DNA from: Adineta vaga
Lineage: Eukaryota; Animalia; Rotifera
Reading direction: 5' to 3'
Assembly: GCA_021613535.1 (NCBI GenBank)
Contig: CP075494.1
Location: 10,354,001 to 10,418,000, forward strand
DNA: 64,000 bases
The translations under genes were made by a program, and so were the position numbers. Positions 13,519 through 24,031 of this stretch are shown in pieces. The notes beneath the pieces were generated by a model. It was not told the origin of the DNA and did not search any database. It was given only the letters and a program-made list of their open reading frames with translations. How positions within the stretch are numbered: position 1 is the stretch's first letter; every line of letters starts with the position of its first letter.

Positions 13519-14211
13519 TCAAATCGATAATTGATCATCAACGGATGCATAACCTGAACTTGAACGTCGTGAACGTTGTTCATGTTCTTGCTCATCAATT
13601 GTAGCTTGATCACCATTAGGTGGGATATATTGTGGTGCATATGTATAACCTGGTTTAACAATAATCGATGAACGTCGATATTCATCATGAATAAATGCAC
13701 AATTTTGACCTAGAACAAACAGAGGAATGCTTATTAGAAAAAAATACATAATTCGTTCGAAAAAATTTGATTTACCATAAGGACAATTATTTGTCATATG
13801 AAAAAGTCGACATAAGACTGATTTATGATTTGCATTGCGTAAATCTTCAGCTCCATGTGCGAATGTACAATCACCATCAAATTTACATACACCAGTTTCG
13901 ACATAATATTTGCATAATTCTGTTTTGTATTTTGAATTGCTCGTTGACCACGAAGCAATCTTAGCTTTATCAATAACAATGACAGGACCACATGGAATTT
14001 TTGAAAATGCTGTATTTCGTGATAAACGCATGTCCTAAATAACGAAAAGAATTACTTTCAGTATACAAATTTGTTTCCATCGACTTACAAAAGCTCGAAT
14101 ATATCGTTTCAAATCTACTTGTTCATCATCACGAAACATTAATTCAAACATTAATTTATGTCGATAAACTTCTCGTTGAGTTTGATAAACTGATGAAGAT
14201 GATACTGACAT
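13519..14211 (-). CDS. Tandem CCCH zinc-finger RNA-binding protein (TIS11/ZFP36-like)
   Basis: 'KYKTELCKYYVETGVCKFDGDCTFAHG' and 'HKSVLCRLFHMTNNCPYG|QNCAFIH'. First exon starts MSVSSSSVYQ at 14211. Confidence 0.85.
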
Positions 14212-17236: not shown

Positions 17237-17694
17237 TGTAATTTATACTGATTGCTTGTTTTACTGTCGATGGAAGATATCTTTTATTCCAAACTGAATT
17301 CTTCCGTTTATATTTACGAGACAAATGCGTATTCTTCTCTTCTAAAACAGGATGCCTTGAGATAATCGATAGATTCTTGAAGATTGACAGCAACACATCT
17401 TAAGAAAACAGCTGACTACAAAGAAAATCTTTTATTAATGTTACGACTCGAACTAGTTGATTAGTTGACATTTGCGTATCGTTACTTTTTTACTCAATAT
17501 TCTTGATCTTATCAATAAACAATGACAACTGATTCATATGAACTTTTGTCCCAATATCATTCCGATGACGTTTTCATACAATTTTATTTCGAGAAAATCA
17601 ATTTGTTCAATAATATCTAATAAAAATGACGCAAAAAAAAATTATCTTATTTACGTCGATCAATATCTACGACTACTGTGTATTTTTTTGTTGA

Positions 17695-18282
17695 TTAAAA
17701 AATAATGTCTTTAATAATAGGTAAATTTTTAAACAGCTGTAAAAGTATATTTGCATAATTCAAAATCGGTGATGTTGGATTGTCTGATGAACGTCCAAAT
17801 AATCGACGATACCAACGAAAAGGTGACAAAGCAAGATGACCTACAGTATGCGATCGAACTAGAGCATAACATGAAGCATGAATATTATTGACAATAATTG
17901 TTCCTTGTTCAGTTAGAGGAGCCATTAAACCTTGTTTTTCAATCTCAATAATATCTGTAATTGCTTCCCAAGTTGTTCTATTCGCATATTTAGATGGTAT
18001 AACAAGAATTTCTTCGCCTTTTGATAGTTTTTCTGCCCAAACAAATCCACTATTTCGACGATGAATTAAATGACGTGGTGATAGTTCAATCTGTGCATTT
18101 TTAGTACGAATACGTAAATATGAACCTTCTTCATTAAGATCTCGATGAAGAAACGCAATAATAGGTGAATAAGCAATTTGATCTTTATCATCATATATTC
18201 GAACTTGTTGACCAATTTTTAATGAAGATAATGCAACTTTACCAACATCAAGAACATCAACGGTTGCATCCGCAGGAAAACA
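17695..18282 (-). other. Hog autoprocessing domain (Hint module + SRR) within the last exon
   Basis: N-terminal CF (Cys codon 18280-18282), SxxH block B, 'APLT.QGTIIVN...ASCYA' and the SRR helices align motif by motif with the Hedgehog C-terminal domain. Confidence 0.93.
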
Positions 18283-20140
18283 TTCCGCCTCTAAAATATG
18301 TCAATGAAATAAAAGAAAGATAATTATCAGATACGACTTACGTTCACAATAGACACCTCGATTTTTATTTCGACATTGACAATAAAATTGATTATCTGGT
18401 TTACGTATGCACTGACCACCATTCAAACATGGTGATGGATTACATGGATCATTACTACAAGTTGGACCAGAAAATTCTGGTAAACAACTACAACCACCAT
18501 AAGGTTCTTCATTCGTTTGAACACATGTACCTATTCATAAGACTTTAGAATCAATTTCAAAATTTCTTATCGAATTACCTCCATTGAGACATGGATAAGC
18601 TGAACAAAAATCTGTTGAATCACATCTTGGACCAGCAAAACCTGGTTTACATACACATTTATTTGACACACAGGTACCCTAGACTTACAAAAAAGTGTCA
18701 TTGTCAATCTCAGTTATTTCGTTACCTGTGTACCGTGACAAGTTGCATCTCCACAAGGAACATAACTAAATTGATTACATGTTATTCCACGAAATACTTG
18801 TGTACATATGCATTGTGCTAATAATATTTATCAACAAAAATTTTCTGTAGAAAAAAAGAGATAATCTAGTTTTTTTTTCGTTGCTTTACCTTGATTATTT
18901 TCTAATACAACACAAGTTCCACCATTTTTACTAAATAAAAAAACATATTAGAAGATTTTCTATTTTATCATTTCCATTACCAAGGATTTGGTTGACAACC
19001 AAGTGATCGAATAGCTGTTTCACATTTAGGGCCTCGATATCGTGATGTACAACGACAATATCCATCCGATTGTCCAACTTCTACACATGTTCCATCATGC
19101 ATACATGGATTTGTATCACAAAATCCACCATATATTTGAGTATCAGTTGAAGTTGTATTATGCAGTATCTCGCAATAATCACCTATAAATCCTAGACGGC
19201 AAATACAAATGCCCTAGAATTTAAAAAAAGGCATAATTCATTCGAGTTGTAAAGAAACTTGATAACTCACTTTTGTGGTCGCTGAATTTGTAATAAAACA
19301 ACTTCCACCATTTTCACATGGATTTGTTAAACAGAAAACAAATTGTGAACGATTACCTACTGCTACAGCAAACATTCGATTATTATAAATTTGTTCATTA
19401 ACATTTGATGAACCTAGACCAGCAATAGCTGCTAGAGTTTCTGCATCAAATTGTCGATATTCAGCAACAGGTAATTTTTTACTCGGTTTCTTTTCTGTTG
19501 TATATTGACAAAAATCACCACGAGATTTTGTTGGACAATTACATCGAGCACCATATGCTATCAAAACAAAACACAATTTTCGCATTGTACATATTCTCAA
19601 AAGATGATCCTATACCAGTTTGAACACATGTACCACCATTATGACAGCTATTTGCTTGACATGAAAGTAATGTTCGACAATCTTTTCCAGTATAATTTGG
19701 TGGACATAAACAAATAAAATCGAAATTTGCTACATCAATACAAGTTGCACCAAACCAACATGGATTAGCTACACATTGTGAAGTGGCATTACATAAACGT
19801 TGACATGTTTCACCACATACACCCTTGAGAAAAGAAAAATCGAAGAAAAATAAAAATTATCTTTTAGAAAAATTTACTTTAACACAGTGACATGATTTTT
19901 GGATTAATCCGCTGGGTAAACGAGTTATTTCACATTCACCACCGCGACAATCATCTGATTGACAAAATTCTGAAGTATGTTAAATTAAATTATATGATAA
20001 CTTTTTTGAAAAATGAACATTTTTTTTACCAGCATGAATTGAAGAATAAATTGAATAAAAACAAATGATGAATAAAAGTGTCTAAAATTCATATTTTTTT
20101 CTTCTGATCATATTTCTCAATTAAAAAAACTTACCTTCAT
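17695..20140 (-). CDS. Hedgehog-related protein: signal peptide + 9 EGF-like repeats + Hog domain (Hint + sterol-recognition region), 11 exons
   Basis: Spliced product: MKTLLFIICFYSIYSSIHA signal; nine EGF units (e.g. CVANPCWFGATC..CLCPPNYTGKDC, CNPSPCLNGGQC..CQCRNKNRGVYC); then QAE|CFPADATVDV..LKIGQQV..YSPIIAFLHRD..ELSPRHLI..WAEKLSKGE..GLMAPLTEQGTIIVNNIHASCYA..HTVGHLALSPFRW..ILNYANILLQL. Confidence 0.93.
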
Positions 20141-20672
20141 GATTAAACTTTGTTCATAGTATAAAATACAATCCTTATTCGTTTAACTTTTATGTCAAAT
20201 AATTAGAATGACGATCAATCGATTCTCTTTCTTCCTTTTGTCATCAATATACTTATGTAAAGTAGAGAGATGAATATGTATACGAAAGTTGATCCTGTTC
20301 AAATGTCGATAGATGCACTTCGAGGTAATAGTAGTCTTATATAAATGAAAATAATACAAGACGTTTGTTTGATTGAGATAGATGACATAAGGTAGTAAGG
20401 AAATGCTGACCTTAAAATGAGGATTTTCATTCATTTGAGATCAATTTTCTTATTTGAAAAAGGCAGCAATTCAAATTCATCAATATATTCTAATGACCTT
20501 GCCAAAATAAAATATGCTAATATGTAATGAGAGAATGAGTGTTCAAAAAAGACGAAGAAGAAACGAAAGGAAAAGGAAGATATTGACCTGTATACAAACG
20601 ACATAAAAAAAAAGGATAAGAAAAGAAAACAATGAGAGAGAGAGAAAGAGAGATTAAGACACATAAAATAAA

Positions 20673-23600
20673 TTAATTAGTCTCATTAGAAATATGATGC
20701 GTTTCATTCAAGTTTGTATTGATTAGAATATCTGGATTTAAATGTTTTTTCTCTCGTTCTTTCCACGGTGTTATTGCCAGGCGAAATCGCTGTAAAATTT
20801 AAGAGAAAAACAAAACAATTAAGATTCATTTCTTTATCTACAAATGACTGATTTACTGTGGCTAAACTTCCACGTTCTACTAATAATTGATAGATAGCAA
20901 CACCTGGGATGAATATAACCGATGACAAAGCAAATACCCAACCAACTAGATGACTCCAATCCGGATACTAAAATACATATATATATAGATATAGATATAA
21001 AGTTAATCAAATCGATTTCTCAATCGTTAATCTTTTAAACCTGATAATAATACGGATCAGTTAATCTTCCATATGTTGGATGAATGTGTTGAATAAGACC
21101 CGAAAGAACAATACCCTTAGAGAATAGATGAAAAGATGAAAAAAAAACAAAAGAATGATATTTGTCATTACTCCAAGAAATAATGGTGCAGCTAAACACC
21201 ATGTTATAATCCAAAATTTTCCTGGTTTACTTCCTAACATTTCTTTGACATCTTCACTTATTCGTTTAATACCATACAGCCATGAAACGGCAATAGCTTC
21301 GAAAAGTACTGCAATAATAATTGAATAAAAAGCTAAAAATAAAACAATGTCTCTGTTTCATTCGCTCGATCGTATTCTGCATATCGATATACCTGCATAG
21401 TTTTGTAATAATTCGACAAAATATACACCAGCATCAGTACAACATGGTATACCAATAAGAAAATAAAACAAGAACAATATTCCAACGAACCATTCTCGAT
21501 GACGACGAAGTACTGGAAATACATCGCTTAAAGCTGTGATGATGGCTTCACTTCCACCAAACTAGTGAACGAAAATGTTTATGCTTCAAAAAAATTCAAT
21601 CAATCATTACCGATGAATCTAGACCAAGTGTTAATAACATCAAGAAGAAAAATATAGCCCAAACAGGTGCCCATGGCATTGTTGCTATTGCTTCTGGATA
21701 CACAATAAACACAAGTGTTGAACCTTGTTCTGCAACATCACTGATTGCTCGTCCTGATATTTCACTCATATAACCCTATGACACGAAAGAAAAAATATTT
21801 TGATTACATTTAATATCTATAAGTTCGCTAAGATGTGTAGTTTGCTTCCGACTTGTGATCTGATTATCTAAAATATTGACTATAGAAATCTAATATCCAA
21901 TTGAAAACTGAAGAATAATTATATCTATCGCTTATTAATTCATGTTCATTGACATCCATAATTATTTTTTAAGTACGAGAATCTAGGTATTCTGATTATT
22001 AATATTGAGGTATATGTGTTTTTACTTCTCATGCGTTCGATTTCATACCAACTTGACTCATGATCATTCTTCTCACCGTTTAAAGTGATTATTGTCATTC
22101 ACTTCCTATTCTTTAGACAATCAATAAATATAACTTACCAAAAACATGAAAATGACAAATCCACTAAGAAAACTTGTTAAACTATTCACTGCTACTGTAA
22201 TCATTGCATCTCTAAAATTAAATCACTGCAATTATATGATCAGATTGAAAAGAAAAGAAAATTCTACCGATAAACATTATGATGAAAATCATTATAACTT
22301 GCAAATGCCATTAATACACCGAAACCAGGTCCCAAAGAGAAAAATGTTTGTGATGCCGCATCAACCCAAACCGATGCATCAGATAATTTACTCAAATCTG
22401 GTCGAATATAGTATTCAATACCTTTCATTGAACCGGTCAAAAATAAACCACGAATCATTAAAATGGTTAAAACAACATAGGGAAACAATGCTGTAAACCA
22501 AACAACCTAAATAAAAGTAATGTATAGAAAGAATTTGATATCTTTGTCTTTACTTTGCCTGATGTTTTAATTCCTTTCCACATAGAAAAATAACAAATCA
22601 GATAAATAATAGCAAGACAAGCAAGATTTTCCAGATTAACATTGCCTAAACGACCCAAACTAAGATTTCGTTGTGGTTGAAGCCGATAGACTTGTAAACT
22701 AATGGAACAAAGATCTCAAACAAATCTTGAACAATAAAATTCACTTACTGAAAATATTCTTGTGCTGGTGAAACAATTTTCGAACGAGCTAATGCTTCCG
22801 AACAATTCTCATACAAATTCATTGGTTGTAAAGCTTTCTCTGTCGAATTCCAAAATTTCGTACAATTATCTAAAAAATCACGACGTGTTTCGACTGTCGA
22901 ACAACTTTCTGTATTCCATGGATTATCTAGGAATAAAAATTCGAAAAATTAATCGAAATATTACGAGACTAAACATACTGCATTGACTCCATGGTAATAT
23001 TCGTTTAAATGAAGCAAAAAGATAATATAATCCCCATGAAATGACTACATTATAATAGAAATCAGTATAGAATGCTATGACAGTAACCGCCCAACCGATT
23101 CCAGCAAATAATGGGCAAATTTTTTTCCAACAAGTTATTGATCCTCGTCGATAATATTGACCAAGTAATAATTCCAAATAGAATAGAGGCATTCCACCAA
23201 GGATAACTGAAAGCATGTATGGAATGAGAAATGCACCTGGAAGAGAAAGAAAAATGAGAAGATTTCAAGAGAATTCATTTAAAAAAAAACCTCCGCCGTT
23301 TTTGTAACATAAATATGGAAATCGCCATATATTTGCTAAATCGACAGCGAATCCAATAATTGATAGAAGAAAATCCAGTTTTTTACTCCATTGTTCTCGA
23401 TCTTCTGTTCGTAATTGATTCGAACGATTTGTTGATGAAAGATTAATCATGGTCACACTATTTCTTTTCTTTGGATGTTCTTCATCAGTTGTACTATTAT
23501 TAATCGCTATCATTGGAACTAAACTTGCACTATCAACAGTTAAATGTAACCCATCATTTTCATCTCCATGTACATGTGTTCTTATCATATCAACATCATC

Positions 23601-24031
23601 ACCTAAAATAAACAATTTCTAATCTAGTACATATCTACAGATGTGAAATAAAAGCGAAGACTGTTTTCTTCTCTAACTAATTGATCTCGATCTCTCATTG
23701 AATATTTAGGATGCTCTGTATTGACTCGATTGCTTGATTATGAAAGACGAAATTAACTGTTTTTATGTTGATAGAAAGAAAATTGATCGGATTGTTTTTT
23801 TTCTATGTCCGAAGGATATTTACTCTTCGTTAAAGAAGAATACAGGAAATCAGCTCGTTTGACAAAAGAAAAGAATTAGAAATTTAATGAACGACAATAC
23901 AACAGTTTTTTTTCTATTTGTAATTCAAATGAATTATTAATTATTTGATTTTGAACAAAGAATATCTCTTCTCTTCTAGACTTACGTCCACATGTATTGA
24001 TGTTTTGATGACTTAAGATTCGTTTGACCAT
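20673..24031 (-). CDS. SLC6 Na+/Cl- dependent monoamine transporter (DAT/NET/octopamine-transporter type), multi-exon
   Basis: '[37 protein letters not shown]|AFLIPY' (TM1 Asp), 'WKGIKTSGK', '[27 protein letters not shown]', '[14 protein letters not shown]', 'LTLGLDS'. Start MVKRILSH at 24031; stop at 20673. Confidence 0.93.

What the first reader, a model, noticed from the sequence alone, without database searches (positions are those of the whole stretch)
17695..20140. EGF-Hog: a secreted nine-EGF protein fused to a complete Hedgehog autoprocessing domain (candidate sterol-tagged Notch-like ligand)
Seen: 11 GT-AG exons splice into signal peptide, EGF1-3, a linker of about 55 aa, EGF4-9, QAE|CFP and a 195-aa Hog domain. 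The domain has the Hint motifs and both SRR helices (HTVGHLALSPFRW; ILNYANILLQL). There is no TM segment and no Hedge domain. The ORF track shows only scraps of this gene. Known: in Hedgehog the Hog domain cleaves before its first Cys and esterifies cholesterol to the released N-terminal domain, and hh-related genes such as nematode warthog, groundhog and quahog place other N-domains on Hog. Inference: the cargo here is a pure EGF array, so the product would be a membrane-tethered, sterol-modified EGF ligand or decoy that combines Notch-type repeats with Hedgehog-type processing. I do not know of this architecture being characterised, but I cannot confirm novelty without a search.
Basis: partly seen in the sequence, partly recalled or inferred. 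Interest (0 to 1): 0.92.

Follow-up and report, generated by a model that had tools for sequence, protein, structure and literature searches.

The report
Secreted nine-EGF protein with Hedgehog-type autoprocessing domain
This is a real, transcribed animal gene (probably of a bdelloid rotifer) that joins nine EGF repeats to a complete Hedgehog-type self-cleaving domain. It is a new cargo for a known processing module, and whether a sterol is attached to the EGF part remains untested.

Summary
On the minus strand, 20140-17695, eleven GT-AG exons (introns 47-72 nt) give a 631-codon frame. It encodes a signal peptide, EGF1-3, a 58-aa linker, EGF4-9, the junction QAE|CFP and a 197-aa last exon. That exon matches Pfam Hint at 1.5e-42.

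Spliced contigs from four runs (two studies) show 8 of the 10 introns. These include the in-frame EGF9|Hog joint, seen in two runs. The signal-peptide exons are not covered by RNA, but their layout is conserved in a paralog.

The Hog domain looks active. It keeps Cys1, SPRH (TXXH), SCYA and two SRR-like helices (AF2 pLDDT 91). The general-base position 46 is His rather than Asp, as in the engineered, active Drosophila D46H variant.

A full-length ohnolog lies on contig C2, and one metagenome contig carries the same EGF-Hog layout. dN/dS is 0.12-0.40.

The genome gives 54 Hint matches, and no Hedge domain was found. The gene is therefore one member of a Hog radiation like that of nematodes.

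The 'Notch-like ligand' reading has no support: there is no DSL domain and no TM segment. Sterol tagging is plausible but unshown.

The scan's first readers noted other EGF-Hog fusions elsewhere in this genome; I did not check them.

Verdict: new variant of a known kind, with moderate interest.

The parts
20135..20140 (-). Exon 1: the start codon plus Lys (ATGAAG), followed by a GTAAGT donor.
   Evidence: The identical ATGAAG|GTAAGT micro-exon is present in the C2 ohnolog. No RNA contig covers it.
20030..20081 (-). Exon 2: the hydrophobic core of the signal peptide (TLLFIICFYSIYSSIHA).
   Evidence: Kyte-Doolittle 1.56 over 17 aa. The ohnolog has an equivalent exon (ASLFLLGLHLLYFSSINA). No RNA contig covers it.
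19878..19969 (-). Exon 3: the start of the mature protein and most of atypical EGF1.
   Evidence: It has no Pfam hit. Its 3' joint 19878|19823 is seen in run X2. It is 60% identical in the ohnolog.
19616..19823 (-). Exon 4: the end of EGF1, EGF2 and the first half of EGF3.
   Evidence: PF00008 at 1.1e-06, 29.3 bits. Joint 19616|19557 is seen in X1, X2 and X4.
19271..19557 (-). Exon 5: the end of EGF3, the 58-aa Cys-free linker and the first half of EGF4.
   Evidence: The linker matches no Pfam family. It is the least constrained part (dN/dS 0.40). Joint 19271|19213 is seen in three runs.
18981..19213 (-). Exon 6: the end of EGF4, EGF5 and the start of EGF6.
   Evidence: PF00008 at 3.3e-07, 30.9 bits. 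Joint 18981|18930 is seen in three runs.
18890..18930 (-). Exon 7: a 41-nt micro-exon forming the middle of EGF6.
   Evidence: Both flanking joints lie in the same contigs of X1, X2 and X4. It is 92% identical in the ohnolog.
18726..18817 (-). Exon 8: the end of EGF6 and the start of EGF7.
   Evidence: joint 18726|18678 in X4. It is 87% identical in the ohnolog and in L021.
18579..18678 (-). Exon 9: the end of EGF7 and the start of EGF8.
   Evidence: EGF_Teneurin and EGF_2 pass their cut-offs. Joint 18579|18530 is seen in X1, and a 14-nt loose end in X2 matches the same joint.
18342..18530 (-). Exon 10: the end of EGF8 and EGF9. It ends four residues before the scissile bond.
   Evidence: PF00008 at 4.7e-07. 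It is 90% identical in the ohnolog and 85% in L021. Joint 18342|18290 is seen in X1 and X5.
18280..18285 (-). Predicted scissile bond: Glu(-1), codon 18285-18283, then Cys1, codon 18282-18280.
   Evidence: Cys aligns with C258 (Cys1) of Drosophila Hh in 6TD6, 6TYY and 1AT0. E|CF is conserved in the ohnolog and in L021.
17848..18282 (-). Hint module of the Hog domain. It carries His46 (18147-18145), the S-P-R-H motif (18081-18070) and the SCYA Cys (17871-17869).
   Evidence: PF01079 at 1.5e-42. The alignment to PDB places His on D46/H46. The AF2 model has pLDDT 91. Foldseek gives 6TYY and 1AT0 at target TM 0.90-0.91 and rmsd 1.5-1.6 A.
17698..17847 (-). SRR/ARR-like C-terminal region: helices at residues 147-153, 155-164, 174-187 and 190-196 of the exon peptide.
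   Evidence: Predicted Hedgehog models in the Atlas align over residues 1-182, query TM 0.84. The motifs H..H.A..PFR and ..Y...L are kept, while the HW of HWY is LN.
17695..17697 (-). Stop codon (TAA). The RNA contig runs on to 17544 as 3' UTR.
   Evidence: X5 record 15.

Best explanation
The locus is a functional, expressed gene for a secreted Hedgehog-related ('Hog') protein whose cargo is an array of nine EGF repeats.

Shown:
- The exon structure, and splicing of 8 of the 10 introns, including the in-frame EGF9-Hog joint.
- A full-length Hint module plus SRR-like helices, with the catalytic Cys1, S/TXXH and SCYA in place.
- Purifying selection on every part.
- Conservation of the whole architecture in an ohnolog and in one environmental relative.

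Inferred mechanism:
1. The signal peptide takes the precursor into the ER, where the EGF repeats fold. Six or seven of them carry the C2-X4-S/T-C3 O-fucose consensus.
2. Cys1 of the Hog domain attacks the Glu(-1) carbonyl (N-to-S acyl shift).
3. The thioester is resolved by a hydroxyl nucleophile held by the SRR-like helices and activated by His46, most likely a sterol.
4. This releases an EGF array of about 410 residues, lipid-esterified on its C-terminal Glu only four residues after EGF9. The array therefore sits on the outer membrane leaflet or in the apical matrix. The 197-aa Hog fragment is discarded.

The EGF fragment most likely acts as a surface or matrix adhesion or signalling module, not as a canonical Notch ligand.
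For: - Gene model and phases.
- Pfam Hint at 1.5e-42 and EGF over its cut-off.
- Spliced contigs from X1, X2 and X4 (study P1) and X5 (study P2), with all joints CT..AC on the plus strand. The 18290|18342 joint is in X1 and X5.
- The PDB alignment puts the gene's C, H, SPRH and SCYA on C1, D46 (H in 6TYY), TXXH and SCYA of Drosophila Hh.
- D303H/D46H keeps structure and activity and widens sterol tolerance: PMC9163320 section 11. D46H also autoprocesses in 293T cells: PMC12054796.
- AF2 model with pLDDT 91 and pTM 0.85.
- Foldseek top hits are 6TYY and 1AT0.
- Atlas Hedgehog models align over residues 1-182, including the helices.
- The ohnolog L022 is colinear for E3-E11, and L021 for the end of E6 through E11.
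- dN/dS is 0.12 for EGF6-9, 0.34 for the Hog domain and 0.25-0.40 elsewhere.
- The 5' micro-exon and signal peptide are conserved in the ohnolog, and there is no TM segment.
Against: - No biochemical evidence exists for cleavage or for any adduct.
- Position 46 is His rather than the Asp of all true Hh proteins.
- The HWY motif of SRR helix 2 reads LNY.
- For nematode Hog proteins it is still open whether cholesterol is the adduct (PMC2362128).
- The -1 residue is Glu, not the Gly of Hh.
- Exons 1-2, which encode the signal peptide, have no RNA support.
- The runs are labelled RNA only as a guess. Their RNA nature rests on the spliced joints themselves.
- The full-length spliced protein was never scored as one sequence.
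Confidence: 0.62

Rival explanations
1. The gene is real and the Hog domain cleaves itself, but the thioester is resolved by water or a small non-sterol nucleophile. The nine-EGF fragment is then released as a soluble secreted or matrix protein without a lipid anchor. In this reading the Hog domain serves only as a maturation or quality-control protease.
For: - The general base is His rather than Asp.
- HWY in SRR helix 2 is LNY.
- The adduct of non-Hh Hog domains is unresolved, hence the term 'ARR' (PMC2362128).
- C. elegans Hh-related proteins are components of the apical matrix (PMC10793445).
Against: - The C-terminal 50 residues are conserved between the ohnologs and L021 and fold as a helix-loop-helix superposable on Hh models. 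That is hard to explain if no hydrophobic adduct is bound.
- The engineered D46H variant remains a cholesterol transferase.
Confidence: 0.25
2. One reading: the product is a Notch-type ligand or decoy that engages Notch receptors through its EGF repeats while anchored by a sterol.
For: - There are nine tandem non-calcium-binding EGF repeats.
- Six or seven of them carry the C2-X4-S/T-C3 O-fucose consensus, read from the exon translations. The consensus itself is from my own knowledge of Notch-type EGFs.
Against: - No DSL, MNNL or JAG-type module was listed for any exon at E<=1, apart from a sub-threshold JAG1-like_EGF2 hit (15 bits against a cut-off of 27) on exon 9.
- There is no TM segment or cytoplasmic tail for ligand endocytosis.
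- EGF arrays of this kind are common in matrix proteins.
- No binding evidence of any sort exists.
Confidence: 0.06
3. The Hog domain is a degenerate relic and the protein stays an uncleaved EGF-Hint fusion.
For: - Some paralogs in this genome have lost the SCYA Cys: it is Asn in L006-L009 and L012, and Ser in L014.
- Several Hint loci carry stop codons.
Against: - This gene keeps Cys1, His46, S-x-x-H and SCYA.
- The Hog exon is under purifying selection (dN/dS 0.34 against the ohnolog and 0.21 against L021).
- The Pfam score is among the three best of 54 in the genome.
Confidence: 0.05

Closest known systems
Nematode Hedgehog-related proteins: warthog, groundhog and quahog, and the 'short-hog' proteins of Enoplea (Burglin 2008, PMC2362128)
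   Same: [quoted passage not shown]
- Both belong to a lineage-specific radiation in a genome where no canonical Hedge domain is found.
- In the quick tree the closest Hog sequences are short proteins made of a signal peptide, a mini-cargo and a Hog domain.
   Different: - The cargo here is an array of a generic, widespread module (nine EGF repeats), not a lineage-specific Wart, Ground or Qua domain.
- The host is not a nematode; it is probably a bdelloid rotifer.
- The window gene's Hog domain does not group with the Hog domains of true Hh proteins in the quick tree. No named nematode Hog sequences were in that tree.
Hedgehog proteins proper (Hh/Shh), C-terminal autoprocessing domain HhC (PDB 1AT0, 6TD6)
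   Same: - The Hint fold is the same (target TM 0.90, rmsd 1.6 A).
- Cys1, TXXH (here SPRH), SCYA and an SRR-like helix-loop-helix are present.
- By inference the two-step chemistry is the same: acyl shift, then transesterification.
   Different: - There is no Hedge (HH_signal) domain.
- The -1 residue is Glu, not Gly.
- The general base is His, not Asp.
- HWY in the SRR reads LNY.
- Sequence identity is only 28%.
Engineered Drosophila HhC D46H (D303H), PDB 6TYY
   Same: - It has His at the general-base position, in the same FxHR context: FMHRN in 6TYY and FLHRD here.
- It is the best structural match of the model.
- The mutant keeps cholesterolysis and accepts non-native sterols (PMC9163320).
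   Different: - 6TYY is a laboratory mutant of a true Hh protein. Here the His is natural, and it is also found in most Hog paralogs of this genome and in many non-Hh Hog sequences.
- Activity of the natural protein is untested.
Other 'X-Hog' fusions: choanoflagellate Hoglet, fungal GmGIN1, lophotrochozoan Lophohog, and the trypsin-, MACPF-, PAN- and collagen-Hint proteins of public metagenomes
   Same: A known or unknown extracellular module sits upstream of a Hog domain by domain shuffling (PMC2362128; PMC9695228).
   Different: - None of those described or retrieved here carries an EGF array.
- The searches that could be run found no paper describing an EGF-Hog protein.

Membership tests
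Hog-domain (Hedgehog-related) proteins, Pfam PF01079 Hint | A Hint module that matches above the curated cut-off over nearly its full length. | tested here: met
   146.1 bits against a cut-off of 29.7, profile positions 12-209 of 213. The fold match to 1AT0 and 6TYY has target TM 0.90-0.91.
Hog-domain (Hedgehog-related) proteins, Pfam PF01079 Hint | A nucleophilic Cys1 as the first residue of the module, directly after the cargo. | tested here: met
   ..QAE|CFP. The Cys aligns with C258 of Drosophila Hh and is conserved in the ohnolog and in L021.
Hog-domain (Hedgehog-related) proteins, Pfam PF01079 Hint | The TXXH motif (T69, H72). | tested here: met
   The motif is S-P-R-H. The His is invariant in alignment A1. 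Thr is replaced conservatively by Ser, as in several paralogs.
Hog-domain (Hedgehog-related) proteins, Pfam PF01079 Hint | A general-base Asp at position 46 (D303 of Drosophila Hh). | tested here: not met
   The residue is His (FLHRD), aligned to D of 6TD6 and to H of 6TYY. The literature shows that D46H is active. The chemistry may therefore be kept, but the literal feature of true Hh is absent.
Hog-domain (Hedgehog-related) proteins, Pfam PF01079 Hint | The SCYA motif with C143. | tested here: met
   The sequence is ASCYA, and the Cys is invariant in A1.
Hog-domain (Hedgehog-related) proteins, Pfam PF01079 Hint | A sterol- or adduct-recognition region after the Hint module (helix-loop-helix, motifs K and L). 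| tested here: inconclusive
   Helices are predicted at residues 147-164 and 174-196, with pLDDT 64-91. They superpose on Hh models up to residue 182. SH..H.A..PFR is kept, but HWY reads LNY. Binding of any sterol was not tested.
Hog-domain (Hedgehog-related) proteins, Pfam PF01079 Hint | An N-terminal signal peptide, so that processing takes place in the secretory pathway. | tested here: inconclusive
   A hydrophobic 19-residue N-terminus comes from two exons whose layout is conserved in the ohnolog. These exons have no RNA cover, and no signal-peptide predictor was available.
Hog-domain (Hedgehog-related) proteins, Pfam PF01079 Hint | Autocleavage with transfer of the cargo to a sterol or other adduct. 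| not testable with these tools
   This needs expression, mutants and mass spectrometry.
Hedgehog proper (Hh) | An N-terminal Hedge / HH_signal domain (PF01085). | tested here: not met
   No exon of the gene matches it. Neither PF01085 nor a Hedge-domain protein finds anything in the whole genome. Those two genome searches had no positive control.
DSL-type Notch ligands (Delta/Serrate/Jagged) | A DSL domain (and MNNL) N-terminal to the EGF repeats. | tested here: not met
   No exon matches DSL or MNNL at E<=1.
DSL-type Notch ligands (Delta/Serrate/Jagged) | A single-pass transmembrane anchor with a cytoplasmic tail. | tested here: not met
   The highest Kyte-Doolittle 19-mer after the signal peptide is 1.39, and the frame ends in the Hog domain.
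EGF-like repeat proteins (PF00008) | Six-Cys EGF units that match above the cut-off. | tested here: met
   PF00008 scores 29.3-30.9 bits against a cut-off of 21.5 in exons 4, 6 and 10. EGF_Teneurin and EGF_2 pass in exon 9. Nine C-x-C..G..C units were counted across the exon joints. EGF_CA (the calcium-binding type) was not listed.

The most novel reading that the evidence does not exclude
The gene encodes the first example of a lipid-anchored (sterol-esterified) EGF-repeat ligand. On this reading it is one branch of a bdelloid-specific radiation of His46 Hog processors, which together replace a lost canonical Hedgehog by lipidating many different secreted cargos. The natural Asp-to-His general-base swap would give these Hog domains a broader sterol range that depends on diet.
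Probability: 0.2. Interest if true: 0.8.

Novelty: new variant of a known kind. Interest (0 to 1): 0.55.

Why it matters
- **Scope of Hog-mediated lipidation.** So far, Hog-mediated cholesterol attachment has been demonstrated only for Hedgehog itself. Whether other Hog domains lipidate their cargo, and with what, has been open since the nematode hh-related genes were described (PMC2362128).
- **A tractable test case.** This gene offers a well-folded, generic cargo (EGF repeats) that antibodies or tags can follow. Its active site looks intact, and it carries a natural version of the D46H swap that broadened sterol specificity in the laboratory.
- **A second animal lineage.** Together with the roughly 35 other Hog loci, and with the Hedge domain not being found, the gene suggests a second animal lineage besides nematodes in which Hog processors radiated onto new cargos.
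- **Limits.** The gene is one member of that radiation. Its architecture is probably already present, uncharacterised, in automatic protein annotations.

Tried and rejected
The joined 631-aa protein was never sent to any search, fold or family tool. As a result there is no full-length Pfam or InterPro architecture query, no full-length structure and no signal-peptide prediction. In scripts the exons were translated separately, and split codons were checked one by one.

**Searches that gave nothing useful:**
- *Word-index search from P0042.* A trypsin-Hint protein, restricted to its Hog region, found only itself and one relative.
- *Word-index search with alignment A2.* P0009 plus the three EGF-Hog Hog domains was swamped by trypsin words and gave no EGF-Hint protein. 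Both searches are inconclusive and are not evidence of absence.
- *Metagenome locus scan.* It found only distant Hog relatives of 25-29% identity.
- *phmmer against 1.8 billion representatives.* It found 4037 Hog relatives but only two below 1e-30. Both are exon-sized fragments.
- *Protein Atlas by features.* It returned only Hint-only clusters, some with Rotifera as the commonest taxon.
- *Literature.* Eight searches found no paper on EGF-Hog proteins, on rotifer Hog genes or on Hedgehog in rotifers. Burglin's Genome Biology review is not held.

**Incomplete survey of Hog loci.** The EGF-Hog fusions noted by other first readers could therefore not be checked. Among the 22 best Hog loci, only this gene and its ohnolog have EGF units upstream.

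**Unfinished tree.** The careful tree did not finish, so only the quick tree (SH-aLRT support) is reported.

**Considered and rejected:**
- *Two separate genes.* Rejected because of the spliced joint in the RNA contigs.
- *A pseudogene.* Rejected because the frame is intact and dN/dS is below 0.4.
- *A bacterial or intein-type Hint.* Rejected because Pfam PT-HINT scores only 12 bits and the best structural matches are Hedgehog.
Full report
**1. The observation**

There are eleven exons: 20140-20135, 20081-20030, 19969-19878, 19823-19616, 19557-19271, 19213-18981, 18930-18890, 18817-18726, 18678-18579, 18530-18342 and 18290-17695. All ten introns are GT..AG and 47-72 nt long. The phases fit, and the CDS is 1896 nt (631 codons plus TAA).

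I did so. The joined protein was never given to any search, family or fold tool, and that step is left out of this report.

**2. What the exons encode**

- *Exons 1-2* give MK + TLLFIICFYSIYSSIHA, a typical signal peptide.
- *Exons 3-10* give 56 cysteines arranged as nine six-Cys EGF units, several of them split by introns.
  - PF00008 passes its cut-off in exons 4, 6 and 10. EGF_Teneurin and EGF_2 pass in exon 9.
  - EGF1 is atypical and has no Pfam match.
  - No calcium-binding EGF, DSL or MNNL model was listed at E<=1.
  - A 58-residue Cys-free linker without family separates EGF3 from EGF4.
  - Six or seven repeats carry C2-X4-(S/T)-C3. From my own knowledge this is the O-fucosylation consensus of Notch-type EGFs, and it is not specific to Notch ligands.
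- *Exon 11* matches Pfam Hint (PF01079) at 1.5e-42, 146 bits, profile positions 12-209 of 213.
- No 19-residue window after the signal peptide exceeds Kyte-Doolittle 1.39, so there is no TM segment.

**3. Transcription and splicing**

Logan contigs of four runs from two studies were laid on 17500-20400. They show eight of the ten introns removed at exactly the predicted sites, all CT..AC on the plus strand.
- The decisive EGF9|Hog joint (18290|18342) is in X1 and X5.
- Overlapping contigs chain exon 11 to 10 (X5, X1), exon 10 to 9 (X1), exons 9 through 5 (X4 record 12), exon 5 to 4 (three runs) and exon 4 to 3 (X2).
- Introns 1 and 2 are not covered.
- The X5 contig runs on to 17544, about 150 nt of 3' UTR.

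The runs are labelled RNA only as a guess; the spliced joints themselves are the evidence that they are RNA. Two loose ends, at 18998 and 19303 in X1 and X2, match neither the window nor the paralog. They remain unexplained and probably come from chimeric contigs through EGF-like repeats.

**4. Is the Hog domain intact?**

phmmer against PDB sequences aligns the exon with Drosophila Hh (6TD6, 1AT0), human SHH (7E2I) and 6TYY.
- Cys1 is present, in CFP.
- TXXH is S-P-R-H.
- SCYA is present.
- The general-base Asp46 (D303 of Drosophila Hh) is His, in FLHRD. It aligns with D of the wild type and with H of 6TYY.
- 6TYY is the engineered D46H/D303H variant. According to PMC9163320 (section 11) it keeps structure and cholesterolysis and gains activity on coprostanol and epicoprostanol. 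PMC12054796 shows that D46H autoprocesses in 293T cells.

An AlphaFold2 model built on a 40-sequence alignment has pLDDT 91 and pTM 0.85. It shows the Hint beta fold followed by helices at residues 147-153, 155-164, 174-187 and 190-196.
- Foldseek ranks 6TYY and 1AT0 first (target TM 0.91 and 0.90, rmsd 1.5-1.6 A), ahead of inteins.
- Predicted Hedgehog proteins of the Atlas align over residues 1-182, which includes the first SRR helices (query TM 0.84).
- In the SRR-like region the SH..H.A..PFR motif is kept, but HWY of helix 2 reads LNY.
- The -1 residue is Glu rather than Gly. It is conserved in all three copies.

**5. Relatives and selection**

The genome (G000, 100.8 Mb in 6 contigs; the window is C5:10354001-10418000) holds a second copy on C2.
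- Exons 3-11 of that copy are colinear, with the same intron positions.
- Its 5' end has the same ATGAAG|GTAAGT micro-exon and a signal-peptide exon.
- A Patched-family pair also lies on C2 and C5, which fits ohnologous chromosomes.
- A 1.8-kb metagenome contig (L021, ENA ERZ27284379) carries the end of exon 6 through exon 11 in the same order.

Nei-Gojobori dN/dS between the window copy and the C2 copy:

| Region | dN/dS |
|---|---|
| EGF1-3 | 0.25 |
| Linker exon | 0.40 |
| Exon 6 | 0.30 |
| Exons 7-10 (EGF6-9) | 0.12 |
| Hog exon | 0.34 |

Against L021 the values are 0.04 for exons 7-10 and 0.21 for the Hog exon. Every part is therefore under purifying selection, and the repeats next to the cleavage site are the most constrained.

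**6. The family in this genome**

PF01079 finds 54 exon-level matches, roughly 35 loci, several in tandem and some with stop codons.
- Neither PF01085 nor a Hedge-domain protein finds anything. These two searches had no positive control, so the result is 'not found', not 'absent'.
- Patched-family loci are present.
- Most paralogs also carry His at position 46. Three have Asp and two have Glu. One tandem group has Asn in place of the SCYA Cys.
- Among the 22 best loci, only this gene and its ohnolog have EGF units upstream.
- The other loci could not be fetched. Other first readers of the scan noted a '20-EGF rod + Hog' (s1-484496) and an 'EGFx3-Hint' (s1-484857) on other pieces. I could not check these.
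- In a quick tree (SH-aLRT only; the careful search did not finish), the three EGF-Hog Hog domains form a clade (support 100). That clade is sister (support 96) to six short proteins made of a signal peptide, a mini-cargo and a Hog domain. It is apart from the Hog domains of true Hh proteins.

**7. Beyond this genome**

phmmer against 1.8 billion representatives gives 4037 relatives, but only two below 1e-30, and both are fragments. The long hits show the Hog domain fused to trypsin, MACPF, PAN, a second Hint or Hedge. Collagen and AIG1 fusions also appear. No EGF-Hint protein was retrieved. The searches able to see full-length proteins were weak for this purpose, so this is not evidence of absence.

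**8. Literature**

Burglin 2008 (PMC2362128) describes the following:
- warthog, groundhog and quahog;
- 'short-hog' proteins with 15-34-residue cargos;
- cnidarian Hogs with novel N-termini;
- Hoglet and GmGIN1 as the only cases with distinct known domains.

The same paper states that it is unclear whether non-Hh Hog domains add cholesterol, hence the term 'ARR'. Lophohog is known from molluscs and an annelid (PMC9695228). C. elegans Hh-related proteins are cuticle and pre-cuticle matrix components (PMC10793445). No paper held here describes an EGF-Hog protein or rotifer Hog genes.

**9. The organism**

- the six-contig assembly of 100.8 Mb;
- the very short introns;
- the ohnolog pairs;
- Atlas clusters whose commonest taxon is Rotifera.

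This is my inference, partly from memory of that species' chromosome-level assembly.

**10. Verdict**

The most likely mechanism is Hedgehog-like:
1. The precursor enters the ER.
2. Cys1 performs an N-to-S acyl shift at Glu-Cys.
3. A hydroxyl nucleophile, bound by the SRR-like helices and activated by His46, resolves the thioester. This leaves the nine-EGF fragment esterified four residues after EGF9.

My estimates are about 0.95 that the gene and its architecture are as described, about 0.75 that it self-cleaves, and about 0.5 that the adduct is a sterol. The Notch-ligand idea is not supported.

The gene is a new variant of a known kind (Hh-related Hog proteins). It is interesting mainly as a tractable member of a Hog radiation in a second animal lineage, and for its natural His general base.

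Noticed in passing
Whole genome G000: PF01079 gives 54 exon-level Hint matches, about 35 loci. No Hedge/HH_signal domain was found with either the family or a protein query. The situation resembles that of C. elegans. Absence is not proven, because the searches ran in six frames and had no positive control.
   Followed up: partly
L002, L005-L009, L012, L014, L015, L017 against L001, L004, L019 and L016, L018: At the general-base position 46, most Hog paralogs of this genome have His, three have Asp and two have Glu. His is also the majority residue among non-Hh Hog sequences in alignment A1. True Hh rows have Asp.
   Followed up: partly
L006, L007 (two copies), L008, L009, L012, L014: A group of Hog genes, mostly tandem, has Asn in place of the conserved Cys of SCYA; L014 has Ser. 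C143 is reported as required for Hh autoprocessing (PMC12054796). These copies may therefore work differently or be inactive.
   Followed up: no
G000:C2:1118981-1120841; C1:15037258-15039456; C6:9613033-9615312; C1:17657229-17661217: Hog exons occur as tandem pairs 1.3-1.9 kb apart, and as one inverted pair. This points to recent local duplication within the family.
   Followed up: no
P0042, P0064, P0009, P0128 (trypsin-Hint); P0046 (MACPF-Hint); P0132 (PAN-Hint); P0172 (collagen-Hint); P0004 and P0005 (two Hint modules); an Atlas cluster AIG1-Hint in Mucoromycota: Public metagenome and genome proteins show Hog domains fused to many different extracellular or enzymatic cargos. Their organisms are unknown here.
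   Followed up: no
window 18998 and 19303 (table 7): Contigs of runs X1 and X2 leave the gene at these two points and continue for 255 and 113 letters. Those letters match neither the window nor the C2 ohnolog. They may come from chimeric contigs through EGF-like repeats or from an unseen isoform.
   Followed up: partly
window 13522-14031 (-) and 23268-23615 (-): The neighbouring ORFs are unrelated to the EGF-Hog gene. One is a CCCH zinc-finger exon (PF00642, 1.1e-13). The other is the first 40 profile positions of a sodium:neurotransmitter symporter (PF00209, 2.9e-20).
   Followed up: no
G000:C2:8946466-8947276 and C5:9688020-9688543: A pair of Patched-family loci lies on C2 and C5, the same two contigs as the EGF-Hog pair. 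This fits large-scale ohnology between those chromosomes. The genome gives 13 exon-level Patched matches in all.
   Followed up: no
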